Positions 24,398 to 62,554 of a DNA stretch of 64,000 nucleotides are shown one piece after another. The notes beneath the pieces were generated by a model. The model had not been told where the DNA came from and ran no database searches. It saw only the letters and a program-made list of their open reading frames with translations. Source of the stretch: Dendrobates tinctorius (lineage: Eukaryota). The position numbers and the translations under genes were made by a program. The number at the start of each line of letters is the position of its first letter. Position 1 is the first letter of the stretch. Location: contig NW_027361704.1 in assembly GCF_039654945.1 (NCBI RefSeq), forward strand, positions 42,036,001 to 42,100,000, read 5' to 3'.

Positions 24398-25712
24398 TGT
24401 CATGATCCAGGTTGGATTATGACAGATAAATGCACAAGTAGGCAAAAAAACACGGCACTCCAGAGAAAAAAAGGAAGGTTGTTCGGTGCTCAAGTAAGGT
24501 TTCCAACCCGTAAATATGTACAAAAATACTTGGCACTCAAAAATGAAGAAGCAGTATATTCTTTATTTAACATCCAGACAAAAATAGACTCATATCATAT
24601 GAACTTTTTCGGTCCAACAACAGACCTTCATCAGAAAGGTTTTTAGGTTTCTTTTGGTAGAAAACTGCAAAAGATACCGATAGGGTAATAGATATCCTTA
24701 GGTGGTAGCAAAGTCTATGCTGGTATTATATAGAGGCTGGAACACGAGTCTATCTGGTTGGAATTAGATAAATGTGACTGGATAAAGCAGGGCTACAGGA
24801 ATGGGTTAACAACGCTAGGAGTGCAGGCTCTGCAAACAGATACAGCACTTAGTGCCTGCAGGAGAAATCCAGGGTGCCAAAAGAAACCAAAAAAACCTTT
24901 CTGATGAAGGTCCGTTGTTGGACTGAAAACGTTCATACAATATGAGTCTATTTTTGTCTGGATGATAAATAAAGAATATACTGCTTCTTCATTTTTGAGC
25001 GCCAAGTATTTTTGTACACAGATAAATGCACAAGTAACCTTTTTTTTTCCTTAAGCTGTGTGCTTAACGTTAGGTTTGCCCCCGGTGGCCATTAGGGTCA
25101 TTGCACTCTGGTTACTTTAGTTTAGTGCATGTGATTATAAAGCAGGTTTGATTGCTCTGGCCTATAAAAGAGTGTCAGGTGTTGCAATCACTGTTGGTGA
25201 TATTGGTCATTTCCAACCATCCCTGGTTGAGGAAGGAGCTAGCAAGAGTTCCTTGCAGCACAGTCAGAGTCCTGGTGTGGAAGGACCGATAGTGAGGAGT
25301 TCCTTGCAGCTCTGACAACGCTTGGTGTCGTAGCAGCTATTCAGGAGGAAAGCTGCATTCTGGTGCTGGTCTCAACAAAACAAAGCTAAGTGGTGTTATC
25401 CCTGTTTGTAGCCTTTCCTTTTGTGTGTTTCAGTGCAGTGGTGGGATTAGTTTCTGCACTGTCCATTTCGCTAGAAAGGGCTAGGTGCAGGGCGAGCTAG
25501 AGTTTTTAGGTATCCTGCTCGGCGACAGGTGCGGAGCCTGTATAGGGACTGTCAGGAGTGTAGAGACACTGACTCAGGGGAGTGCAGGAAGTCTCCATGT
25601 CCCCGTTCCCTATCGCAGGGCCCTCCATTGTATCGGTTTCCCTGGTGTTTCCATTTATTATTTAAATTCGCCCTGCTGGAGGCGGTGTGTCCAGTCACAC
25701 GTGACCATCACA
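24398..25712 (+). mobile_element. Solo LTR inserted in the Gypsy integrase region
   Basis: TG...CA termini (TGTCATGA...CCATCACA); 5-bp TSD GCTTC at 24393-24397 and 25713-25717; TATAAAA at ~25163. Confidence 0.8.
24441..25017. mobile_element. Penelope-like non-coding insertion with ~140-bp inverted repeats, each bearing a hammerhead-like core; 19-bp TSD
   Basis: TSD ACAGATAAATGCACAAGTA at 24422-24440 and 25018-25036. Arms at 24518-24657 and 24877-25017. Core CTGATGA-A-GGTCC-GTTGTT-GGACT-GAAA at 24901-24928. Confidence 0.75.
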
Positions 25713-38399: not shown

Positions 38400-39830
38400 T
38401 TAGGGAGGGACGACAGCCTGCAGTACCCTTATACCAAAAGAGAGGTCTGTGGAAGCACCCAAGTCTAGCCTAAAATGACTATAAATGGTGCTTGGAGAGG
38501 ACCAAGTAGCCGCCTTACATATCTGGTCAATGGAGACTTCTGATCTTTTGGCCCCCGAGATCGCCATGGCCCTGGTGGAATGCGCCCTCAGCTTCCCAGG
38601 TGGCGACCTGCCCTTTGAGGTGTATGCTATTGAAATCGCCTCTCTAATCCATCTGGCTAGTGTATTTTTCGACGTTCTACAACCTTTCCTAGGGCCTTGA
38701 TGGGAGACAAATAGGGCATTATCTTTCTTCCAGGGATCGGTGACTGCCAGATATTCTATGAGGCATCTCCTAACATCCAGGGTGTGTAGTTTCTCTTCCT
38801 TCTCGTTAGCTGGGTTAGGGAGGAAGGATGGGAGGACTATCTCCTGTGTCCTATGAAAGCTAGAAACTACCTTAGGTAAGTACGCTGGATCAGGTCTGAG
38901 TATTACCCTATCCTCTTTGAACTGTAAATAAGGAGGACGCCTAGATAATGCCTGGATATCGCTTACTCTGCGAGCTGATGTTAGAGCTACCAGGAAGGCT
39001 ATTTTGAGGGACAGGTTTTTTATGGAAGCCAATGAGATAGGTTCGAATGGGGTTTCCGTCATAGCAGTGAGGACTAGGTTCAAGTCCCACGGCATGAATC
39101 TATCCTTCACTATTGGTCTGGCTCTACCTGCCGCCTTAATGAACCTGCTGACCCAGTAATTACCAGCGATGTTGCAGCTAAAAAGGGCCCCCAAGGCTGA
39201 TACTTGTACTTTAAGGGTACTGGTAGAAAGCCCCATGTCCAGACCTTTCTGTAGAAACTCTAATATCTGAATTATAGGTGCTGAATCCCCAGCGACTACT
39301 CCTGAGTTTTGAAGGAATTTTTTCCAAATTCTAACATAAATTTTCGTGGTAATGATTTTTCTACTTTTAAGTAGGGTGTTAATTAGGTCTGGGGAGAAGC
39401 CTTTCTCTTCTAGCAGTGACCGTTCAAACTCCACGCCGTCAGATGTAGGCCAGCCAACTGAGGATGGAACACTGGGCCCTGGGATAGGAGATCCGGGATG
39501 TCCGGAAGAACCAAAGGATCGGATACCGACATGGTCCTGAGGCATGAGAACCATGCCCTCCTGGGCCAAAATGGAGCGATAACTATAACCCTTGCTCTGT
39601 CTTTTCTGATTTTCTTTATCACCAGGGGTATTAGAGACAGAGGAGGGAAGGCGTAGGCTAGCCTGAAGTCCCACTTTATCAGAAAGGCATCTACCGCCAG
39701 AGGATTCTCTCTGGGATTTAAGGAGCAGAATTGTCTCAATTTTTTGTTCTCCTTGGTGGCGAAGAGATCTACCTCTGGATGTCCCCACTTTTGTACAATC
39801 AGGTTGAATATGGAGGTGTTTAAGGACCAT
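38400..39830 (-). CDS. DIRS tyrosine recombinase
   Basis: LVALTSARRVSDIQAL (catalytic R), LDVRRCL, RAHSTRA (HxxR), CKAATWSSPSTIYSHFRL. The expected terminal Tyr appears as F here versus HYRL in element B, so it may be inactive. Confidence 0.9.
   Translation of the reverse strand: MVLKHLHIQPDCTKVGTSRGRSLRHQGEQKIETILLLKSQRESSGGRCLSDKVGLQASLRLPSSVSNTPGDKENQKRQSKGYSYRSILAQEGMVLMPQDHVGIRSFGSSGHPGSPIPGPSVPSSVGWPTSDGVEFERSLLEEKGFSPDLINTLLKSRKIITTKIYVRIWKKFLQNSGVVAGDSAPIIQILEFLQKGLDMGLSTSTLKVQVSALGALFSCNIAGNYWVSRFIKAAGRARPIVKDRFMPWDLNLVLTAMTETPFEPISLASIKNLSLKIAFLVALTSARRVSDIQALSRRPPYLQFKEDRVILRPDPAYLPKVVSSFHRTQEIVLPSFLPNPANEKEEKLHTLDVRRCLIEYLAVTDPWKKDNALFVSHQGPRKGCRTSKNTLARWIREAISIAYTSKGRSPPGKLRAHSTRAMAISGAKRSEVSIDQICKAATWSSPSTIYSHFRLDLGASTDLSFGIRVLQAVVPP
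39410..39790 (-). pseudogene. DIRS N6-adenine methyltransferase-like domain overlapping the YR ORF
   Basis: DAFLIKWDFRLAYAFPP...VIVIAPFWPRRAWF, the typical DIRS1 MTase-like domain after RNase H. Confidence 0.8.
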
Positions 39831-39855
39831 TCTCCTTGCTTTAGCTGATTGCGGC

Positions 39856-40308
39856 TTAAAAAGTCTGCCGTGATGTTGTCCTCCCTTTTATATGTAGAGC
39901 TGTTAAAGATAGAAAATGCTGCTCTGCTAGTTGGAACAACCGCTCTGCTACAATCATCAGGGGTCTGGAATGGGTCCCGCCTTGGTGATTGATATACGCC
40001 ACGGTGACCTGATTGTCGGAGAACACTCGCACGTGATGGCCCTGTAGATACACAAGGAGCTTTTTAGCCGCCTGTTCTACTGCTGTCAATTCTTTTAGGT
40101 TAGACGACATTCCTAACTGATGATGTTCCCATTGGTCCTGGACTAGCATTTCACCCATATGAGCCCCCCAACCGGAAGGGCTAGCATCTGTGGTGACTAT
40201 GCGGGTTGTGTTATACTCCCAGGGTACCCCTTTAGATAAATTATCCTTGTCTAGCCACCACTCTAGGGACTCCCTTGTGTTACGGGACAAGGTTAGCTGG
40301 CCCTCCAA
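39856..40308 (-). pseudogene. DIRS RNase H
   Basis: TTDASPSGWGAH, SSNLKELTAV, VFSDNQVTVAYINHQGGT; separated from the RT by a stop. Confidence 0.88.
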
Positions 40309-40374
40309 GTAACCCCCAAGGATTTTTTGATGTAATAAAACCTCGCTCTGTAGTTTCCTTGCATGAAACTGGGC

Positions 40375-41223
40375 CTACTGGACTGCCGGGATACAGGCCG
40401 AGAGAGAGCCTAGAAGGGACATGGCTTTCCTGAGGGACATGGTGGGGTTATTGGAGGCGTTCAGGACCTGGTAGTGGAGGCGAACAAGCTTCTCCGGAGG
40501 CAGACGGCATTCCTGTTTCTCAGAATCTAGGATTAGGCCCAAGAATTGTTGGACTCTCATCGGTTGCAACCGAGATTTTTTGATGTTCAGCAACCATCCT
40601 AACCGCTCTAGGGCAAACATTGCCCTTTGTAGCTGTTCCAAACAATGGTTCGCCATTTTGCCTACAATAAGAAAATCGTCCAGGTAGGGGACCACCAGAA
40701 TGTCAGATTCACGTAGATGGGCCATGACTTCCGCTATCACTTTAGTAAATACTCGGGGGGCGACTGCCACACCAAAGGGAAGGGCCGCATATTGGAAATG
40801 TCGAACTGACCCATCTAACTGAACTGCCACTCTGAGAAAATGCTGATGAGCTGCATGGATGGGTATATGGTAGTAGGCGTCTTTTAAATCTAACACCACC
40901 ATAAAGCAGTTTTGGAACAGCAATTTTATTGTGGACTTAATTGTTTCCATTTTAAACGGACGTATGACCAGAAACTTGTTGAGGGCCTTAAGGTTTATTA
41001 TAGTCCTAAAGGAGCTGTCTGGCTTGCGGACCAGGAACAGAGGGGAGTAGAAACCCGTCCCCCATTCTCCCTCTGGAACCTCTGTTAGGACTTTCTTGCC
41101 GCACAGGTCATGAACCTCAGCCTCCAGGGCAGCTTGTTCTGAAGTAGAAGACCTGAGTGGGGTGATTTTAAATCGATCATGGGGAACCCTAGAGAATTCT
41201 AGTCGCAGTCCCACAGCTATCAC
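40375..41223 (-). pseudogene. DIRS reverse transcriptase
   Basis: FYSPLFLVRK, DLKDAYYHIPI, LPFG, YLDD. Confidence 0.92.
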
Positions 41224-41497
41224 CCCCAGTATCCAGATGCTATTAGAGATCAGCGACCAGGTTGGGTAGAAGGCAGCTAGTCTCCCTCCTACCGGGGCAA
41301 CTAGTCATTGGGGCGGGTTTTTCGTGTCACGAGCTGGACCTTCCTGGCGCCCCCCTCCTCCAAACATGAATCCTGTACCTTTCCTTCTTTTCTCATCCCA
41401 TCTGCCCTGATCTCTGGACGGCCTTCTACGGAAATATCCTTTCCTGGTAAAGGGACGTCTATAAGAAGGATTTGGCAGACTGGGAAATTTCTTTTTG

Positions 41498-42782
41498 TCA
41501 TCCCCAGCTTTTTCTAATAATTCGTCCAGGACAGGGCCGAAAAGATACTCCCCCCTCGCAAGGAATGGAACAGAGACGGGACCGGGCCTGAATATCTCCC
41601 GGCCAGCACTTTAACCAGAGCGCTCTTCGCGCTGCATTAGATAGACCCGCGGCTCTAGCCGCCATCCTTGCAGAGTCTGCTGAAGCATCAGCTAAAAACG
41701 CAGCGGCATTCTGGATGATCGGCAGATTTTTTCGAATGGATGCTCTTGAGGCTCCGTCTTTTAGCTCGGAATACAGTTGATCTAGCCAGACCATCATGGA
41801 TCTGGCTGTACTGGTGGCAGCTATCGCTGGTCTTAGTGCGCCTGCTGACATCTCCCATGTTCCTTTTAGAAAAGAATCTGCTTTTTTATCTAGCGGATCT
41901 TTCAAGGAGGCCATATCGTCAAAGGGTATGGAGGATTTTTTGGACGCTTTGGCTACTGCTGCGTCTAGTTTCGGGGCCTTATCCCATCTGCTTACTACTG
42001 GGTCATCAAAGGGGTATCTCCGCTTGAAAGCTGGTGGCATGGTGCCCCTTTTTTCAGGTCTCTTCCATTCTCTGTCTATTAGGCTCTGGACTTTATCATT
42101 TAATGGAAAAGCCCTGCGTTTTCTGGGGTCTAGACCCCCGAACATTATGTCCTGTGCTGAGAGTTCCCGTTTTGTGTCCGCTACCCCCATGGTGGACCTT
42201 ATTGCTTTCACTAGTCTGTCCATTTGATCTAAGGGGAAGCAGAATCGGCTAGAGTCTTCATCCGAGGAAGATGACGAGGAGGCCGAGGAATTATCACCTT
42301 TCCTAGGGGTGACTCAGGCCTCCGAGCCTGAAACACTAGCCTCTCTTCTAGAAGGTTCCCCTTGAGATAAGACTTTCATCTCCGACCTGATTATCTCCCT
42401 CAGGCTTGAAGTGAAGTCAGGTGTCTCTTCCGCTACCTGCGTAAACGGGGGAGAGTATAAGGGCCTGACAATCTACCCCTGGACTCCCTGTCTCTATCAA
42501 CCCCTACCGTCTGTCGTATGCATGGCTGACATAACTTTTTAGGGTGGCCATCTGGTAGGGGGCAACTACAGAGGGCACATTCCCTGTGCTTCTGTTTTCC
42601 CGTAGCTTTCTTCCCCTGCGAAAAAACATAAGGGAACACTGCATCAGGGTACATTCACGGAGATCTCTTACCCATGCAGTTGAAGCAGGTACCAGATCAC
42701 GGAGGGAGGCAGGGGGATCCTTTAGTCTGGAGGAACTTCCGCGGCTTTGGTCGCTTGTTCGTCTGTTTCTTTTGCTGGCCAC
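41498..42782 (-). pseudogene. DIRS gag with an N-terminal CxxC...CxxC finger, apparently split by two short GT-AG introns
   Basis: Exon 42508-42615 encodes GKKATG...CALC...CQPCIRQT. Splicing out 42616-42671 and 42437-42507 puts it in frame with ORF 41498-42223, with one TGA at ~42315. Confidence 0.8.
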
Positions 42783-48481: not shown

Positions 48482-50046
48482 CAGTTATGGCCCAACGTTT
48501 TGAGAATGACACAAATATTAATTTTTACAAAGTCTACTGCTTCATTTTTTCTAATGGCAATTTGCATATACTCCAGAATATTATAAAGAGTGATCAGCTT
48601 AACAGCAATTACTTGCAAAGTCAATATTTGCCTAGAAAACTAACTTTATCCACCAAAACACATTTCAACATCATTGCAGCCCTGCCTTAAAAGGACCAGC
48701 TAACATCATTTCAGTGATTGCTCCATTAACACAGGTGTGGGTGTTGATGAGGACAGGGCTGGAGATCAAGCTGTCATGATTAAGTAAGAATGACACCACT
48801 GGACACTTTAAAAAGGAGGCTGGTGCTTGGCATCATTGTTTCTCTTCTGTTAACCATGGTTATCTCTAAAGAAACACGTGCAGTCATCATTGCACTGCAC
48901 AAAAATGGCCTAACAGGGAAGAGTATCGCAGCTAGAAAGATTGCACCTCAGTCAACAATCTATCGCATCATCAAGAACTTCAAGGAGAGAGGTTCCCTTG
49001 TTGCCAAAAAGGCTCCAGGGCACCCAAGAAAGACCAGCAAGCGCCAGGACCGTCTCTTAAAAGTGTTTCAGCTGCGGATCGGGCTACCAGCAGTGCAGAG
49101 CTTGCTCAGGAATGGCAGCAGGCAGGTGTGGGTGCATCTGCACGCACTGTGAGGCGGAGACTCTTGAAGCAAGGCCTGGTCTCAAGGAGGGCAGCAAAGA
49201 AGCCACTTCTCTCCAGAAAAAACATCATGGACAGACTGATATTCTGCAAGAGGTACAGGGAGTGGACTGCTGAGGACTGGGGTAAAGTCATTTTCTCTGA
49301 TGAATCCCCTTTTCGATTGTTTGGGACATCTGGAAAACGGCTTATTCGGAGAAGACCAGGTGAGTGCTACCACCAGTCTTGTCTCATGCGAACTGTCAAG
49401 CATCCTGAAACCATTCATGTGTGGGGTTGCTTCTCAGCCAAGGGAATGGGCTCTCTCTCAGTCTTGCCTAAAAACACAGCCATGAATAAAGAATGGTACC
49501 AGAATGTCCTCGAAGAGCAACTTCTCCCAACCGTCCAAGAGCAGTTTGGCGATCAACAATGCCTTTTTCAACATGATGGAGCACCTTGCCATAAAGCAAA
49601 GGTGATAACTAAATGGCTCAGGGAACAAAACAGAGATTTTGGGACCATGGCCTGGAAACTCCCCAGATCTTAATCCCATTGAGAACTTGTGGTCAATCAT
49701 CAAGAGACGGGTGGACAAACAAAAACCTTCAAATTCAGACAAAATAAAAGCATTGATTTTGCAAGAATGGACTGCTATCAGTCAGGATTTGATCCAGAAG
49801 TTGATTGAGAGCATGCCAGGGAGAATTGCTGAGGTCCTGAAGAAGAAGGGTCAACACTGCAAATATTGACTTGCTGCATTAACTCATTCTAACTGTCAAT
49901 ATAACCTTTTGTTACTCATAATATGATTGCAATTATATTTCTGTATGTGATAAAAACATCTGACAAACACACATAAAAACCAGAGGGCAGCAGATCTTGT
50001 GAAAATATAATATTTGTGTCATTCTCAAAACTTTTGGCCATGACTG
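48482..50046 (+). mobile_element. Tc1/mariner transposon
   Basis: TA|CAGTTATGGCCCAACGTTTTGAGAATGACACAAAT ... ATTTGTGTCATTCTCAAAACTTTTGGCCATGACTG|TA. Confidence 0.92.
48857..49869 (+). pseudogene. Tc1 DD34E transposase with two frameshifts
   Basis: MVISKETRAVIIALH..., VIFSDES, FQHDGAPCH and [15 protein letters not shown] spread over three ORFs. Confidence 0.9.
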
Positions 50047-51826
50047 TACTTACATTTCTTATTTTCTGGAAGGAAGAGTAGCTCTGCAGCACAAACAGCT
50101 GATCTAACAACTGCTGTCATGGGTTCCGGAAAAACCGGCTACCGGTAAGTAACCATTGTGGTTTTCCCTTCACCCATGACAGCACCACCTGAGAGATTTT
50201 TGGAGATTCGAAACACCTTAGGGAGGGACCACCGCTTGCAGCACCCTTCTACCAAAGGTTGTCAGCAGAGGAGGATAGATTTAATCTATAGTGCTTAAAG
50301 AAGGTTGAAGGTGAGGCCCAGGTAGCGGCCTTACAAATCTGTTCGATCGATACCTTTGCTTTTTCGGCCCAGGAGGTCGCCACAGCTCTGGTGGAATGAG
50401 CCTTGATGCCGTCAGGAATCGGGATACCACTAGCTGTGTAGGCTACACTAATGACCTCCCTAATCCATCTAGCAATAGTCCCTTTTGAAACCCCATCGCC
50501 TTTCCTGGCACCCTGAAAAGCTACGAATAGGGACTGGGACCTCCTCCACTGGCTAGTCATAGATATGTATTCTACGAGAGCTCTCTTAACATCCAGATTA
50601 TGGAACTTTTCCTCCCCCAGATTTTTTGGGTTCTCGCAGAAAGATGGAAGGACAATTTCCTAGCCCCGATGGAAATCTGATGCTACCTTGGGCAGATAAG
50701 CGGGGTCTGTTCTTAACACTACCCTATCCTGAAAGACTTGCGTATAAGGTGGATTTACTGAGAGAGCCTGTAAATCGCTTATCCTGCGGGCTGACGTGAG
50801 GGCCACTAACAGGATTGTTTTTAGGGTCAGAAACTTTAGGGGTAGCTGATGTAATGGCTCATACGGATCTTTTGTAAGGGCCTCTAGCACTAGGTTTAAA
50901 TCCCAGGGGGCTATCCGGGGTATTGGGATAGGCCTAGCTCTATGGCAGGATTTAATAAACCTGGCTACCCATCTATTTGATGCCAATTTTCAGTTGTAGT
51001 GCAGACACCTGAACTTTAAGTGTGTTCACTGCTAACCCCATCTGCAACCCCGATTGTAAGAACTCCAGGATGGCATTAATCGGGGGATCTTTCCCTAACG
51101 CCCTACCTAAGAACTGCAGGAACTTATTCCATGTTCTGCCGTAGATGTTAGTCGTCACTGGTTTCCTACTCTTTAGCAGGGTGCCCACCAACCCGGGGGA
51201 GAACCCTCTATTCGTTAAAAGCGACCTTTCAAATTCCACGCCGTCAGATGGAATCCTTTGACCTGAGCGTGGAATATTGGACCTTGAGCTAGTAGGTCCG
51301 GGATTTCTGGTAGAACCCATGGATCGGAGAGGGACAACCTTCGTAGCAGAGCAAACCAGGGCCTTTTTGGCCAAAATGGAGCTATTAGAATCACCCTGGC
51401 CTGATCGTTTCTGATTTTTCTGACAACTGTTGGGATCAGAGCCACTGGGGGGGAATGCATAAGCTAGCCTGAAGTTCCACTGGATGTGCAATGAGTCCAC
51501 TGCCCATGGATTTTCTCTCGGGTTTAGAGAGCAGAACCTTTCTGTTTGCCTGTTGTGTTTGTTGGCAAAGAGGTCTATCACCGGTTAACCCCAAAGCTGA
51601 GTTATTTTTTGAAAAATGGACCGGTTTAGCGCCCATTCCCCCTGCTTCAGGGTATTGCGACTCAAGAAGTCTGCCTCTATGTTTTCTGCCCCTTTTACTG
51701 TATATGTAAGACTGTCAAGGAGTGTAGGTGTTCTTCTGCTCTGCTCAGAATGTCTGTCGCCGCTTCCATTAAGGAGTGTGATCTTGTCCCTCCTTGGTGG
51801 TTGATGTATGCCACTACTACCTTGTT

Positions 51827-52176
51827 AAGATGAGGATGAATGAACTCATGGAGATCAACATCCAACACTGCGGAGACACCATCACGTGTTTCTCAACGCA
51901 GTGATTCTAGAGCACTGCCCCATCCCTTATGGGAAATATGCAAAACATGCACAGTCTTTTACTAGGCATTGCTCCTACCAGCCAGTTTCCTACTCCACAC
52001 TGATGAGGGGCAATACCCCGAAACAGCTGTCTGTGGATGGATACCATGTTTTGGCATAGGTGGTTTCCTTCATAGGAGACTGCCCTTCCCGTGGTTGTTC
52101 CTTCCCGGGGAAAGACCTGGCTGGTCATTGCTTGCGTTGAGAAACATGTGATGGTGTCTCCGCGGCTTCTGTTTTG
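51827..52176 (+). mobile_element. 350-bp hammerhead-ribozyme-bearing retroelement (retrozyme-like) with a 15-bp TSD
   Basis: TSD CACTACTACCTTGTT at 51812-51826 and 52177-52191. Removing the insert restores DIRS RNase H SDNKVVVAYINHQGGTRS. Confidence 0.9.
51994..52037 (+). ncRNA. Type I hammerhead ribozyme, predicted cleavage after GUC at 52031
   Basis: Stem I UCCACA/UGUGGA, core CUGAUGA, stem II GGGG-CAAUA-CCCC, GAAA, minimal stem III with palindromic ACAGCUGU, then GUC. Confidence 0.9.
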
Positions 52177-52455
52177 CACTACTACCTTGTTGTCTGACAT
52201 GATGCGTACATTTCGACCCTGGAGTAGCGGAATGAAATGATTTAGGGCCTTGCTCACTGCCCACAGTTCTCTCAGGTTGGAGGATGCTTCCCCTTCTTGA
52301 CGCGTCCAGGAACCCTGACCTATGATGCCCCTTAGGTGTGCCAAACGGAAGAGCCCTGAACTGAAAGTGCCTTAGCGTGCCTTGAATATAAAGTGCTATC
52401 CTCAAGTATTTCTGGTAATCTGGGTGGATAGGGATGTGATAATACGCATCCTTTA

Positions 52456-53392: not shown

Positions 53393-56300
53393 TTAAATCG
53401 ACCATGGCCATGAAGCAATCTTGGTGTAGCAGCTTCACCGCCGTAGTTACTGATTCCATCTTGAAGGTCGAGTTCCTTATCCATAGATTGAGCCGTTTGA
53501 GATTTATGATTGTCCTGAAAGTTTGATCGGGTTTTTTTTATCAGAAAAAGGGGTGAATAAAACCCCTTCCCTTCCTGTAGGCGTGGTACCTCGGAGAGTA
53601 CCCGCTTGTCTATCAGGCTCAGGATCTCTGTTTCTAAGGCCACCTGCTCTTCGGTCACCTTCCTGATGGGTGTGATGACGACCACGGATTTTGGCTGACG
53701 GATGAAGGGAATTTTCAGGCCTTCTGTCAGGATGGTTAGGATCCAGGCGTTGGAGGAGATCATCTCCCAGGTTTGGAAAAAGAGTGCCAATCTCCCCCCC
53801 ACTGGAATACTGGCGTCACTGTGGCGACTTTTTTGAGGTGGAGGTACCTCCACCAAACATAAATCCCGATTCTTTTTTTCTTTTATCCTCCCATCTTCTC
53901 CTGTCAGCGGGAGGGCGCCCCCTATTGAATCTCCCCCTCCGAAAGGGCTGTCTCCTCTGATCCATAGGGAATCTGGGGAAGCCTTTTTTCTTATCGCCTG
54001 CTTTCTCCAGTATATCGTCCAAGTTCTTGCCGAACAAGAATCGACCGTCGCAGGGGAGAGAGCATAATTTGGCCTTGGACTGGAGGTCACCCGGACAGCC
54101 CTTAAGCCATAACGCGCGTCTAGCAGCATTTGATAGTGATGCTGCCCTGGCTGTCATCCGCATAGAGTCCGCCGAGGTATCGGCCAAAAAAGCTGCTGCC
54201 CCGTGCAAGAGATACATCTCCGATAAGATTTTCTCTCTTGGGACCCTTGAAGCCAGCTTTTCTTCTAACTGCTGCAGCCAGATCATGAGGGAGCATGCCG
54301 TACAAGTACCCGCTATTGCCGGCTTTAGTCCTCCTGCTGTCGCTTCCCATGCGTGCCTCAAATATGAGTCCGCCTTTTTGTCTAGTGGGTCTCTAAGAAC
54401 CCCTGCGTCTTCCAGGGGCAGGGCCGACCTTTTGGAGGATCTGGACACCGCTGCATCTATTTTGGGGATTTTGTCCCATATCTCTGCATCCTTATGCTTT
54501 TGAAAGTGGATGGAAGGGCCCCCGATTTTTCGGGCTTTTTCCACTCCTTCTCAATAAGTGCCTGGATCTTCTCGTTTACCGGAAAGGTCCGTTTTTTCCT
54601 CTCCTGAAGCCCCCCAAACATAACATCCTCTAGGGTTTTAGCCGCCTTTTCTTCCTGTAGGCCCATTGTAGCTCTAATGGCCTTTAGGAGGGCGTCTGTG
54701 TCTTCTACAGGGAAACATGGTTTACCCCCCATGTCGCTGTCTGAGGAGTCTGAGGAGGATGATTTTTCCGCCTGAGATGACATTGACGCGGAATCCGAGG
54801 GGGAACTAGGGGGATCCTTCCTGTTTTTTTTCTCTTTTTTCAATAGGGACTTAATTGAGCCTTCCATTTCTGACCTTAGGGCAGATATCAGATTGGCTGC
54901 GAAACTAGGCGCTTCCTCCGCCATAGTCCGCTGAATGCACGCAGCACAGAGATCTTTTTGCCAATCTCTTGCTAGGGGAGATTTACATATAGCACAATCC
55001 CTATTGTTCTTCTTGCTTCCCGCTTTCCTAGGCCTTTCCTACAGGGTGAAGCATACAACAGAAGCCCTTTAACATATGCTAACATTCACGAAGATCACTC
55101 ACCTCCCGAAATCAAGGGTACCGGACTCGGAGGCTGCGTCGGGGCACGTGACCTGCGTTCTTTGGATCTTGCTGAATCCCCCGACCTGCGGCTGGGGCGA
55201 CTGCTGCTGGAATGGCTTCCATGCTTTCTGCCAGAGGGCTGAGAGGGAGGCAGGGACGCTGAACGTTCCTGCTCTGACTCCATGTTGCACCACCGTCTGC
55301 TGCCGCCTTCTCTTTAAATACCATGCCTCCGCTCAGGTGAGCGTCTCTCCCCTCCCCCCTGCGACCGCCGGCCGCCTTTTCAAGAAGCCGGCCGGCGTCG
55401 CACCCGGCGCCATTAAACCGTCGCCCTTCTCTGACGTCAGCCGGCGCACCCAGCATGCAATGCGCCGCTGACGTCAGCGGCCGGAAGAAGCCAGCGTCTC
55501 TCCCCTGCTATGGGGATCGAGATGCGGTGTGCGCGAGGGGAGGGCGGCGCGGTGGGGGATCCCACCGACGCCCGCACGAACCCGGAACCCCAGAGGGCCC
55601 GGGGACTGCACATCCAGCACCCGACGGCCGGCGCTGCAGGTGAGACACCTGTTCTTCCTGCGCCGGGACGGGGCTGGGTCCATTTCCTTCGCCCATGACA
55701 GGCACCGCCAACAGTGGGGTTCCTTCCAGGACAGGAACCCAACTGAAGCGGGGGAGAGGTGCCGCCCCTTATATCTCAGTAGGTTCCTGTCCTGGCGGGG
55801 CGGATCCCTCTCTCAGGTGGTGCTGTCATGGGTGAAGGGAAAATAAAGATATTTACGAGCATGGATCGAGATGGAGATTTTTCAACAGTACTCCGTTTTG
55901 TCTATTTTTGTACCTTAACCCCATTTATTTTGGCTGTAATACTAATCAGCCCACATACCGGAGTGACATCATTTCTACAAAAACTATATTTTCCCTCTTT
56001 CTACTGAATATTAAAATATTAATGCATTTTTTACAAGATTTTCAATGCTGATCCTATCAGTTTCACCATCTGTTTATAGCCCTAATCCAGACAATATCAT
56101 CTGGGTCAAAACTATGAAATGATGTAATTTGCAGCATCCAAACTTTCAGCTGACATCAGAAAGAGGGATGATTTCCTGTCAAGATCCCATTCACTTTCTG
56201 AAATCCATTCATTACATCCAGTCCTAGAAGCGTCTACACCAAAACACAATCATTCTTCAATTTACAATTCCCCTCTATCCAGCAGAACGGCCCTGCTTAC

Positions 56301-60947: not shown

Positions 60948-62554
60948 CAGTGGGGCAAAAAAGTATTTAGTCAGTCAGCAATAGTGCAAGTTCCACCACT
61001 TAAAAAGATGAGAGGCGTCTGTAATTTACATCATTGGTAGACCTCAACTATGGGAGACAAACTGAGAAAAAAAAATCCAGAAAATCACATTGTCTGTTTT
61101 TTTTTTCATTTTATTTGCATATTATGGTGGAAAATAAGTATTTGGTCAGAAACAAGCAATCAAGATTTCTGGCTCTCACAGACCTGTAACTTCTTCTTTA
61201 AGAGTCTCCTCTTTCCTCCACTCATTACCTGTAGTAATGGCACCTGTTTAAACTTGTTATCAGTATAAAAAGACACCTGTGCACACCCTCAAACAGTCTG
61301 ACTCCAAACTCCACTATGGTGAAGACCAAAGAGCTGTCAAAGGACACCAGAAACAAAATTGTAGCCCTGCACCAGGCTGGGAAGACTGAATCTGCAATAG
61401 CCAACCAGCTTGGAGTGAAGAAATCAACTGTGGAAGCAATAATTAGAAAATGGAAGACATACAAGACCACTGATAATCTCCCTCGATCTGGTGCTCCATG
61501 CAAAATCCCACCCCGTGGGGTCAGAATGATCACAAGAATGGTGAGCAAAAATCCCAGAACCACGCGGGGGGACCTAGTGAATGAACTGCAGAGAGCTGGG
61601 ACCAATGTAACAAGGCCTACCATAAGTAACACACTACGCCACCATGGACTCAGATCCTGCAGTGCCAGACGTGTCCCACTGCTTAAGCCTGTACATGTCC
61701 GGGCCCGTCTGAAGCTTGCTAGAGAGCATTTGGATGATCCAGAGGAGTTTTGGGAGAATGTCCTATGGTCTGATGAAACCAAACTGGAACTGTTTGGTAG
61801 AAACACAACTTGTCGTGTTTGGAGGAAAAAGAATACTGAGTTGCATCCATCAAACACCATACCTACTGTAAAGCATAGTGGTGGAAACATCATGCTTTGG
61901 GGCTGTTTCTCTGCAAAGGGGCCAGGACGACTGATCCGGGTACATGAAAGAATGAATGGGGCCATGTATTGTGAGATTTTGGAGTGCAAACCTCCTTCCA
62001 TCAGCAAGGGCATTGAATATGAAACGTGGCTGGGTCTTTCAACATGACAATGATCCAAAGCACACCGCCAGGGCAATGAAGGAGTGGCTTCGTAAGAAGC
62101 ATTTCAAGGTCCTGGAGTGGCCTAGCCAGTCTCCAGATCTCAACCCTATAGAAAACCTTTGGAGGGAGTTGAAAGTCCGTGTTGCCAAGCGAAAAGCCAA
62201 AAACATCACTGCTCTAGAGGAGATCTGCATGGAGGAATGGGCCAACATACCAACAACAGTGTGTGGCAACCTTGTGAAGACTTACAGAAAACGTTTGACC
62301 TCTGTCATTGCCAACAAAGGATATATCACAAAGTATTGAGATGAAATTTTGTTTCTGACCAAATACTTATTTTCCACCATAATATGCAAATAAAATGAAA
62401 AAAAAAACAGACAATGTGATTTTCTGGATTTTTTTTTCTCAGTTTGTCTCCCATAGTTGAGGTCTACCTATGATGTAAATTACAGACGCCTCATCTTTTT
62501 AAGTGGTGGAACTTGCACTATTGCTGACTGACTAAATACTTTTTTGCCCCACTG
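60948..62554 (+). mobile_element. Young Tc1/mariner transposon with ~200-bp TIRs
   Basis: TA|CAGTGGGGCAAAAAAGTATTTAGTCAGTCAGC...reverse complement|TA; near-identical TIRs. Confidence 0.95.
61316..62339 (+). pseudogene. Tc1 DD34E transposase with a single frameshift near 61980
   Basis: [10 protein letters not shown]..., [32 protein letters not shown]. Confidence 0.92.

What the first reader, a model, noticed from the sequence alone, without database searches (positions are those of the whole stretch)
51827..52176. 350-bp self-folding retrozyme-like insertion with an intact hammerhead ribozyme, inside a DIRS RNase H gene
Seen in the sequence: an exact 15-bp TSD whose removal restores the host codons SDNKVVV|AYINHQGG; no ORF and no poly(A); and a complete type I hammerhead at 51994-52037. 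The rest of the insert is extensively self-complementary: 51870-51900 pairs with 52133-52163 (31 bp, one G-U), CCAGCCAG..TTTCC pairs with GGAAA..CTGGCTGG, and AAAACATG pairs with CATGTTTT. Established: minimal type I hammerheads with a palindromic stem III occur in newt satellite-2, non-LTR retrozymes and Penelope-like elements, and often cleave as dimers. Inference: the cleavage site lies mid-insert rather than at an end, as expected if a circular or multimeric RNA was reverse-transcribed in trans from an internal start. That would make this a dispersed, ribozyme-processed circRNA retroelement family in a frog.
Basis: partly seen in the sequence, partly recalled or inferred. Interest (0 to 1): 0.9.

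Follow-up and report, generated by a model that had tools for sequence, protein, structure and literature searches.

The report
Frog hammerhead-ribozyme retroposon, single copy
This is one full-length copy of a very abundant, protein-free jumping repeat that carries a self-cutting hammerhead RNA motif, pasted into a dead retrotransposon gene; repeats of this kind ("retrozymes", satellite-2-like) are already described in frogs and salamanders, so the locus is a clean example, not a new thing.

Summary
A 350-bp non-coding insert (51827-52176) sits between exact 15-bp target duplications inside the RNase H-like domain of a decayed DIRS-like element. It carries a complete type I hammerhead (51994-52037, cut after C52031) and folds into a highly paired rod (z about -9.6).

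The hammerhead has the canonical amphibian form: helix I 6 bp, helix II 4 bp, helix III 2 bp with a palindromic tetraloop. It is predicted to work only as a dimer. It stays below Rfam thresholds, but a strict descriptor finds it once in 64 kb and never in 300 shuffles.

Public contigs of two organisms show a very abundant family (summed depth a few hundred times that of the DIRS flanks). Depth steps sharply at both insert ends, the flanks beyond them differ, and no head-to-tail joint was listed. The copies therefore share fixed ends and are not circularly permuted. Penelope-like reverse transcriptases are reported to start internally, downstream of the hammerhead, and that explains the geometry.

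Circular RNA was not testable. A lone monomer with one ribozyme cannot excise itself. This scan has already noted many similar hammerhead repeats elsewhere in this genome. Low novelty.

The parts
51812..51826 (.). Left copy of the 15-bp target-site duplication (CACTACTACCTTGTT)
   Evidence: Exact direct repeat with 52177-52191. The empty-site joint skips 365 nt with 15 shared letters.
51827..52176 (+). 350-bp non-coding insert: one full-length unit of a very abundant hammerhead-bearing repeat family
   Evidence: Only one copy in the window. Summed contig depth is about 0.4-1.4 million over the insert against about 1-6 thousand in the flanks, with steps at 51826 and 52178. Loose ends with unlike flanks lie at 51830 (41 contigs in X1) and 52178 (32 contigs in X5), and both ends are seen in X13. 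No coding potential, no tRNA and no Pol III boxes.
51994..52037 (+). Type I hammerhead ribozyme motif. Helix I is 51994-99 with 52032-37; core CTGATGA at 52000-06; helix II 52007-10 with 52016-19 and loop CAATA; GAAA at 52020-23; helix III 52023-24 with 52029-30 and loop AGCT. Predicted cut after C52031.
   Evidence: Read directly. The descriptor scan gives 1 hit in the window and 0 in 300 shuffles. Rfam matches are sub-threshold. A related subfamily in RNA contigs of another organism has helix I TCTGCA/TGCAGA, which is two compensatory pair changes (loose ends at 51998 and 52033). The dimer cofold forms an 8-bp trans helix III.
51868..51900 (+). 5' arm of the long stem of the rod
   Evidence: Pairs with 52133-52165 over 33 bp. 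No variant at 10% share or more inside it across family contigs.
52133..52165 (+). 3' arm of the long stem of the rod
51977..51990 (+). 5' arm of the second stem (ACCAGCCAGTTTCC)
   Evidence: Pairs with 52109-52125 in both the linear and the circular MFE.
52109..52125 (+). 3' arm of the second stem
52177..52191 (.). Right copy of the target-site duplication
52177..52371 (-). Host: N-terminal part of the RNase H-like domain of a decayed DIRS-like retroelement, ending ...RIMSDNKVVV at the insertion point
   Evidence: PF17917 RT_RNaseH, E 1.4e-4, 22.4 bits (cutoff 24.8), profile positions 39-81 of 105. Translation.
51695..51826 (-). Host: continuation of the RNase H-like domain (AYINHQGGTRS...)
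   Evidence: Translation in the same frame once the insert and one TSD copy are removed. Downstream minus-strand pieces carry DLFA and APFWP motifs. Piece 50252-50659 has a weak Phage_integrase match, E 0.054.

Best explanation
The insert is one full-length monomer of a very abundant, non-coding, hammerhead-carrying retroposon family of an amphibian. This is the class called non-LTR retrozymes, or satellite-2-like repeats.

Shown:
- It entered by a staggered-cut, copy-in mechanism that left a 15-bp target duplication inside the RNase H-like domain of an already dead DIRS-like element.
- Family copies have fixed 5' and 3' ends.
- The element carries a canonical amphibian type I hammerhead whose weak 2-bp helix III and palindromic ACAGCUGU segment favour a double-hammerhead (dimer) fold.
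- The RNA would fold into a roughly 70% paired rod in which the ribozyme core is sequestered.

Inferred:
- Insertion was target-primed reverse transcription by a Penelope-like element RT/GIY-YIG enzyme acting in trans. That enzyme starts cDNA synthesis at a fixed internal site downstream of the hammerhead, here 145 nt after the cut site. This would explain why the ribozyme sits mid-insert and why the 3' end is fixed.
- The sharp 5' end means the template had a defined end, or was copied for exactly one unit, rather than being a randomly permuted circle.
- This single-ribozyme locus cannot excise a unit-length RNA by itself. Any self-cleaved linear or circular RNA of the family must come from multimeric source loci or from dimerisation in trans.
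For: - TSD, restored reading frame and paralogous empty sites.
- Complete hammerhead: unique in the window and absent from 300 shuffles.
- Its architecture equals the 'canonical metazoan type I' form: helix I 6 bp, helix II 4 bp, helix III 1-2 bp with a palindromic loop (PMC4209133). It resembles axolotl HHR_Amex2, carried on a 350/353-nt unit, which has helix III of 2 bp plus a tetraloop (PMC7229834).
- Two compensatory pair changes in helix I in a related subfamily.
- The dimer cofold is 5.5 kcal/mol better than two monomers, with an 8-bp trans helix III. The active monomer fold scores -11.0 against an MFE of -18.7.
- Rod fold: z -9.6 linear; -156.6 kcal/mol and 71% paired as a circle.
- Very high family abundance, equal depth at both ends, sharp steps at 51826 and 52178, loose ends with low-agreement flanks, and no go-back joint listed.
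- Literature on Penelope-like elements: internal RT initiation downstream of the hammerhead, nicking and extension on both strands, and cleavage not needed for insertion (PMC11167929). Frog retrozymes occur as dispersed monomers, dimers and multimers and are related to Penelope pLTRs (bioRxiv 10.64898/2026.07.22.740005).
- A second insertion in the same window (24441-25017) has a 19-bp TSD and inverted arms, each with a Penelope-type minimal hammerhead. This suggests (inference) that Penelope-type insertion has acted in this genome.
Against: - No Penelope-like ORF lies in the window. No link between this family's ends and any Penelope pLTR could be tested, so the mobilising enzyme is inferred only.
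- Rfam scores are far below the gathering thresholds.
- Cleavage, transcription, strand of the RNA and circularity are all untested. The one candidate RNA run of the same organism is only guessed to be RNA, and all runs were contigs.
- Retrozymes are defined by tandem organisation. That is not seen at this locus or in the contig joints.
- Contig data can miss rare junctions, and six joints and 327 loose ends were not shown.
- What fixes the 5' end is not explained. No promoter or processing signal was identified.
- The target site is not AT-rich, unlike the preference reported for the anole enzyme.
Confidence: 0.72

Rival explanations
1. One reading: the template was a hammerhead-processed, ligated circular RNA (or a multimer) that was reverse-transcribed in trans. 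The version compatible with the data is site-specific priming in the terminal region of the rod followed by exactly one turn around a 350-nt circle. That would give unit-length copies whose two ends abut in the circle.
For: - The insert has the length of one unit.
- In the circular fold its two ends lie next to each other, with 51827-29 pairing 52166-68.
- Rod-like folds and circular RNAs are documented for axolotl 331/353-nt retrozymes (PMC7229834).
- Other unverified notes of this scan report TSD-flanked 1.8-mers and dimers of 351-354-nt hammerhead units in this genome.
- Penelope RT initiates at fixed internal sites (PMC11167929), so fixed ends do not by themselves exclude a circle.
Against: - No head-to-tail joint 52176->51827 appeared among the listed joints of three runs that hold the family at very high depth. 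Rolling-circle copying should give copies longer than one unit.
- No RNA evidence of any kind.
- The hammerhead is predicted to be inactive as a monomer.
- In the anole Penelope system, unprocessed RNA is the main substrate and no reads end at the ribozyme cut (PMC11167929).
- It is not shown that the tandem units noted elsewhere belong to this family.
Confidence: 0.17
2. A solo pseudo-LTR, that is, a 5'-truncated 3' fragment of an autonomous Penelope-like element rather than an independent non-autonomous family.
For: - Penelope insertions are mostly 5'-truncated and keep one terminal repeat that contains a hammerhead (PMC4209133; bioRxiv 10.64898/2026.07.22.740005).
- 24 of 57 Xenopus retrozyme families match Penelope pLTRs.
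- The TSD length fits.
Against: - The 5' end is sharp. Depth is equal at both ends, and the sequence beyond 51830 has low agreement (0.52-0.61) across 41+ contigs. Few or no copies therefore continue into a common longer parent.
- The hammerhead is the canonical type I form with a helix III, not the helix-III-less minimal variant typical of Penelope pLTRs (PMC4209133).
- No RT or GIY-YIG sequence is nearby.
Confidence: 0.08
3. A foldback or MITE-type DNA transposon, or a Pol III SINE, in which the hammerhead-like string is incidental.
For: - Both strands fold equally well.
- There is a long inverted repeat, and copies have fixed ends.
- The inner arms keep a weak trace of inverted similarity (score 12; 10 of 500 shuffles as good).
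Against: - The inverted repeats are not terminal: they lie 43 nt and 13 nt from the ends.
- A 15-bp TSD is too long for known cut-and-paste families.
- No A or B boxes, no tRNA-like part and no A-tail.
- The full hammerhead is not expected by chance. Its helix I shows compensatory changes in a relative, and only loop 2 varies across copies.
Confidence: 0.03

Closest known systems
Animal non-LTR retrozymes of amphibians (axolotl Rtz_331/Rtz_353; newt satellite 2), Cervera & de la Pena 2020, PMC7229834
   Same: A non-coding unit of about 350 nt. A type I hammerhead with a 6-bp helix I, 4-bp helix II, 2-bp helix III plus palindromic tetraloop, and a similar loop 2 (CAAUA here against CACUA in the Ax353 construct). 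Predicted dependence on dimerisation. A highly self-paired predicted fold. A TSD longer than 4 bp. Very high copy number.
   Different: Here it is a solitary monomer with family-wide fixed ends and no tandem joints detected. Helix II is a strong all-G-C stem without the U-U mismatch. Expression and circular RNA are not shown. Sequence homology outside the ribozyme was not tested, because the Ax353 sequence would have had to be typed in.
Xenopus non-LTR retrozyme families and their dispersed monomers (Li, Clavereau & Pollet 2026, bioRxiv 10.64898/2026.07.22.740005); repeat-associated hammerheads of X. tropicalis (Perreault et al. 2011, PMC3088659; Cervera & de la Pena 2014, PMC4209133)
   Same: A frog genome. 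Hammerhead repeats occur as evenly dispersed monomers as well as dimers and multimers. The average amphibian consensus is 316 bp. The link to Penelope-like elements is inferred.
   Different: Those authors regard monomers as non-transposing offspring. Here the monomer with fixed ends appears to be the predominant inserted form.
Penelope-like elements and their insertion mechanism (Frangieh et al. 2024, PMC11167929)
   Same: The hammerhead lies upstream of a fixed 3' end. The TSD has variable, double-digit length. Related opposite-strand junctions occur in the family, and an inverted two-armed hammerhead insertion lies in the same window. Both fit priming from both DNA strands.
   Different: There is no RT/GIY-YIG ORF. 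The 3' end is 145 nt rather than about 85-92 nt after the cut. The hammerhead is canonical rather than minimal. The target is not AT-rich.
Schistosoma Sm-alpha SINE-like hammerhead elements (cited in PMC4209133 and PMC3088659; the details given here are from my own recall)
   Same: A short, dispersed, non-coding retroposon that carries a type I hammerhead.
   Different: By recall, Sm-alpha has Pol III promoter boxes and an active monomeric ribozyme. No such boxes are found here.

Membership tests
Hammerhead ribozyme, type I | Conserved core: C3-U4-G5-A6-N7-G8-A9, G12-A13-A14, the A15.1-U16.1 pair, and H17 that is not G | tested here: met
   CTGATGA at 52000-06, GAAA at 52020-23, T52030, C52031. 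The descriptor scan finds it uniquely.
Hammerhead ribozyme, type I | Three helices around the core, with helix I open (type I topology) | tested here: met
   Helix I 6 bp, helix II 4 bp, helix III 2 bp plus tetraloop. Both motif ends lie in helix I.
Hammerhead ribozyme, type I | Rfam covariance-model score at or above the gathering threshold | tested here: not met
   The best clan match is Hammerhead_3 at 16 bits against 48.5. The RAGATH-1 hammerhead scores 13 bits against 56.3. Nothing was found in the 4-kb scan. The Hammerhead_1 score itself is not shown, because only the best match of a clan is kept.
Hammerhead ribozyme, type I | Covariation that supports the helices | tested here: inconclusive
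   A relative has helix I TCTGCA/TGCAGA where this copy has TCCACA/TGTGGA, which is two compensatory pairs. The two sides come from loose-end consensus sequences of different contigs.
Hammerhead ribozyme, type I | Site-specific self-cleavage | not testable with these tools
   Needs in vitro transcription of monomer and dimer constructs.
Non-LTR retrozyme (animal) | Non-coding unit of about 170-400 nt with a type I hammerhead and no LTR, PBS or PPT | tested here: met
   350 nt with no ORF homologue and a hammerhead.
Non-LTR retrozyme (animal) | Tandem head-to-tail organisation, from dimers to multimers | tested here: not met
   There is a single unit at this locus, and no go-back joint was listed in three runs. 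Tandem 351-354-nt hammerhead units are noted elsewhere in this genome, but they are not verified to be this family. Published frog families do include dispersed monomers.
Non-LTR retrozyme (animal) | Highly self-paired predicted RNA structure | tested here: met
   z -9.6 as a linear molecule. The circular MFE is -156.6 kcal/mol with 71% of bases paired.
Non-LTR retrozyme (animal) | Accumulates as linear and circular monomeric RNA | not testable with these tools
Non-LTR retrozyme (animal) | TSDs larger than 4 bp where present; GC below 50% | tested here: met
   15-bp TSD. GC is 49.4%.
Penelope-like element (solo pLTR or fragment) | Continuity with, or terminal identity to, an RT plus GIY-YIG coding element | tested here: inconclusive
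   There is no such ORF in the window, and the family's 5' flanks are diverse.
Pol III SINE | tRNA-, 5S- or 7SL-derived head with A and B boxes, and an A-rich or LINE-derived tail | tested here: not met
   No tRNA. No boxes and no A-tail.
MITE or foldback DNA transposon | Terminal inverted repeats at the very ends, and a short TSD (2-10 bp) | tested here: not met
   The inverted arms lie 43 nt and 13 nt inside the ends, and the TSD is 15 bp.
DIRS-like (tyrosine-recombinase) retroelement, host of the insertion | RT and RNase H followed by a tyrosine recombinase instead of an integrase | tested here: inconclusive
   RT_RNaseH E 1.4e-4, just under the cutoff. Phage_integrase E 0.054. Atlas leads are all RVT_1 or RT_RNaseH at 0.83 or below. 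The DLFA and APFWP motifs fit DIRS only by my recall.

The most novel reading that the evidence does not exclude
This family may spread almost only as exact one-unit monomers with fixed ends. That could happen if a Penelope-type RT primes at one specific site of a monomeric circular RNA and stops after a single turn. Alternatively, the monomer itself, and not a tandem array, may be the transposing unit. In that case the dimer-dependent hammerhead would serve something other than end formation, for example RT recruitment or trans-dimer cleavage. Either reading would revise the current view that retrozyme monomers are dead-end offspring of tandem arrays.
Probability: 0.12. Interest if true: 0.55.

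Novelty: new member of a known kind. Interest (0 to 1): 0.25.

Why it matters
The locus is a textbook-clean insertion. It has an exact TSD, a restored host frame and paralogous empty sites, and the element belongs to a class whose life cycle is still unsettled.

Its modest value lies in the family-level pattern seen here: very high copy number, fixed ends, no tandem joints detected, and a hammerhead that should work only as a dimer. This pattern bears on whether animal retrozymes move through circular RNA or are ordinary passengers of Penelope-type reverse transcription.

It does not open a new category. Hammerhead repeats in frogs have been reported since 2011, and frog retrozyme families were surveyed in 2026.

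Tried and rejected
- **Rfam.** The 4-kb scan gave no ribozyme match. The narrow scan gave only sub-threshold hammerhead matches.
- **Other copies through proteins.** The homologue search with the 89-codon open frame was blank. The exact-product look-up of a 57-aa ORF was blank.
- **Other copies through DNA patterns.** Two scans of metagenome contigs and one of viral contigs, with the hammerhead core or the stem arm, were all blank. These collections are not expected to hold frog DNA, so the blanks mean little.
- **This scan's findings, searched by sequence.** Blank.
- **Primers of Li et al., Table 7.** No meaningful match against the window.
- **Pfam on host ORFs at default stringency.** Nothing. 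Only short in-frame pieces gave the RNase H-like and weak recombinase matches.
- **Pol III boxes and tRNA.** None.
- **Rejected: origin as a simple recent head-to-head dimer.** Only the outer roughly 33-38 bp are near-perfectly complementary. The inner arms show just a weak trace.
- **Left out.** Aligning the insert with the axolotl Ax353 sequence printed in a supplement, because that would have meant typing a long sequence.
- **Copy number.** Not calibrated, because summed contig depth is not a copy count.

Full report
**1. What is there**

The sequence shows a 350-bp segment, 51827-52176, bracketed by the exact 15-bp direct repeat CACTACTACCTTGTT (51812-26 and 52177-91).

- On the minus strand the host frame reads ...RNVRIMSDNKVVV up to the insert and AYINHQGGTRSHS... 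after it. Removing the insert and one repeat copy restores a continuous frame.
- The piece just upstream of the insertion point matches the RNase H-like domain of retroelement polymerases (PF17917, E 1.4e-4, slightly under the curated cutoff).
- A piece about 1.5 kb downstream matches tyrosine recombinases weakly (PF00589, E 0.054).
- Together with motifs I recall as DIRS-typical (DLFA..., APFWP...), the host is best called a decayed DIRS-like element. That label is only moderately supported: Pfam gave nothing on the larger ORFs, and Atlas neighbours are RT/RNase H clusters at weak scores.
- Contigs from public runs include paralogous host copies without the insert. One joint 51811->52177 skips 365 nt with 15 ambiguous letters, which equals 350 + 15. 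Four contigs continue from 51826 straight into DIRS-like sequence. The insertion boundaries are therefore real.

**2. The hammerhead**

Read directly from the sequence:

| Part | Position / sequence |
|---|---|
| Helix I | TCCACA / TGTGGA, 6 bp |
| Core | CUGAUGA |
| Helix II | GGGG / CCCC, closed by CAAUA |
| Core | GAAA |
| Helix III | A-U and C-G, closed by AGCU |
| H17 | C52031 |

- A strict descriptor that I wrote required the core, a helix II of at least 4 bp, A15.1/U16.1, H17 that is not G, and 6 of 6 pairs in helix I. It finds this site alone in 64 kb on both strands and nothing in 300 dinucleotide-preserving shuffles.
- Rfam does not reach any threshold: 16 bits for the best clan member and 13 bits for the RAGATH-1 hammerhead on a 131-nt scan, and no match in a 4-kb scan. 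I report this as a failed formal test.
- The architecture is exactly what Cervera & de la Pena describe as the canonical metazoan type I hammerhead: helix I 6 bp, helix II 4 bp, helix III 1-2 bp with a small palindromic loop, active as a dimer (PMC4209133). It closely parallels axolotl HHR_Amex2 on its 350/353-nt unit (PMC7229834).
- Folding agrees. The active monomer fold is worth -11.0 kcal/mol against an alternative MFE of -18.7 that sequesters the core. Two copies cofold at -42.9 against -37.4 for two monomers, through the 8-bp palindrome ACAGCUGU.
- In an RNA library of a third organism, related contigs keep the core. Their loose-end consensus sequences give helix I TCTGCA/TGCAGA, which is two compensatory pair changes. 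This is suggestive only, since the two sides come from different contigs.
- Across family contigs, the only variants at 10% share or more inside the motif are in loop 2.

**3. The fold**

- The + strand folds at -159.9 kcal/mol (z -9.6). As a circle it folds at -156.6 kcal/mol with 71% of bases paired. This includes a 33-bp stem (51868-51900 with 52133-52165) and a 14-bp interrupted stem (51977-90 with 52109-25).
- The minus strand folds nearly as well, so the rod is a property of the DNA palindrome and is not evidence for one RNA strand.

**4. The family**

All 24 runs offered were assembled contigs. I laid four of them on 51700-52300.

- Summed contig depth is about 0.4-1.4 million over the insert in the main DNA run, against about 1-6 thousand in the DIRS flanks. 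A second organism gives similar ratios. The family is therefore far more abundant than the (itself repeated) host element. Depth is not a calibrated copy number.
- Depth is the same at both ends of the insert and steps exactly at 51826 and 52178.
- Many contigs run from the element into unlike sequence at 51830 (41 in X1, consensus agreement 0.52) and at 52178 (32 in X5, agreement 0.48). Both ends are seen in X13.
- No joint from 52176 back to 51827 is among the listed joints.
- Copies therefore share fixed ends, lie in different places, and are not detectably tandem or permuted.
- Other copies seem to start with a short A run (AAAA-ATGAGG), where this one has AAG.
- This copy differs from the family majority at 52074 and 52123 and has a perfect TSD, so it is fairly young.

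**5. Mechanism**

- A 15-bp TSD, the lack of terminal inverted repeats, the lack of Pol III boxes or a tRNA part, and the lack of an A-tail argue against DNA transposons and classical SINEs.
- The published properties of a Penelope-like enzyme fit best. Reverse transcription starts at fixed internal sites about 85-92 nt downstream of the hammerhead cut. Both DNA strands are nicked and extended. Ribozyme cleavage is not required, and unprocessed RNA is the main substrate (PMC11167929).
- The same window holds a second insertion (24441-25017) with a 19-bp TSD and two 139-nt inverted arms, each with a Penelope-type minimal hammerhead. I take this as an indication (inference) that Penelope-type insertion has acted in this genome.
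- The Penelope link for the present family remains an inference. No RT/GIY-YIG ORF is in the window, and I could not compare ends.
- What sets the sharp 5' end is unexplained. It could be a transcription start, or one exact turn around a circular template.
- A point of logic: one ribozyme in one unit can only cut a transcript once. This locus cannot release a unit-length or circular RNA. Only multimeric source loci, or two RNAs dimerising, could.

**6. Comparison and novelty**

- Repeat-associated hammerheads in Xenopus were reported in 2011 (PMC3088659).
- About 9,000 minimal hammerheads were reported in X. tropicalis in 2014 (PMC4209133).
- Amphibian retrozymes with circular RNAs were reported in 2020 (PMC7229834).
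- A 2026 preprint describes 57 Xenopus retrozyme families present as evenly dispersed monomers, dimers and multimers and related to Penelope pLTRs. Only one dimer cleaved in vitro.
- Notes of this same scan list hundreds of hammerhead findings in this genome. They include an abundant 352-nt unit and TSD-flanked tandem and head-to-head forms, which other follow-ups judged ordinary. I could not verify that those belong to the same family.
- I therefore file this as a member of a known kind. It is possibly already catalogued, which I could not check.

**7. Limits**

- No raw reads were available, so nothing can be said on expression, strand, RNA ends or circles.
- Contig joints and loose ends were only partly listed.
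- No other genomic copy could be fetched.
- The organism is coded. "Frog" rests on the scan's own labels and on the match to the amphibian literature.

Noticed in passing
window 24441-25017: A second, unrelated hammerhead-bearing insertion of 577 bp sits between exact 19-bp TSDs (ACAGATAAATGCACAAGTA). It has 139-nt inverted arms that are 91% complementary. Each arm carries a Penelope-type minimal hammerhead (CTGATGA, then a 5-bp helix II with an extra A, then GAAA-ACGT-TC) about 85 nt from the outer end. The left side has about 76 extra nt, which may be a 'tail'. It looks like a head-to-head insertion primed from both strands.
   Followed up: partly
window 51826/51950 and 51947/52178 (joints seen in runs X1, X5, X13): A minor variant of the family has opposite-strand junctions. 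The reverse complement of the 5' end (...GTTCATTCATCCTCAT-T run) is joined to 51950, and 51947 is joined to the reverse complement of the 3' end (AAACAGAAGCCGCGGA...). Possible explanations are a full-length copy nested in reverse inside another copy at 51947-51950, a subfamily with the left 123 nt inverted, or a Penelope-type or twin-priming product. It is present in two organisms and remains unexplained.
   Followed up: partly
window 51910-51972: Family contig depth dips two- to three-fold in this stretch. Common variants cluster here: 51915 C>A/T and an extra C after 51917. This may be a hypervariable or subfamily-specific segment of the element.
   Followed up: no
window 53819-54550 (minus strand): An open frame upstream of the host RT matches the LAP2alpha C-terminal domain (PF11560, E 1.2e-13). 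This is an unexpected domain for a retroelement gag-like region.
   Followed up: no
window 48784-49670 (+) and 61238-62336 (+): Tc1/mariner-type transposase remnants, with HTH_Tnp_Tc3_2 and Sleeping Beauty-like HTH matches. They flank the DIRS-like element.
   Followed up: no
window 38403-42313 (minus strand): A second, better preserved retroelement has long open frames (495, 309 and 271 aa), one with a YxDD motif.
   Followed up: no
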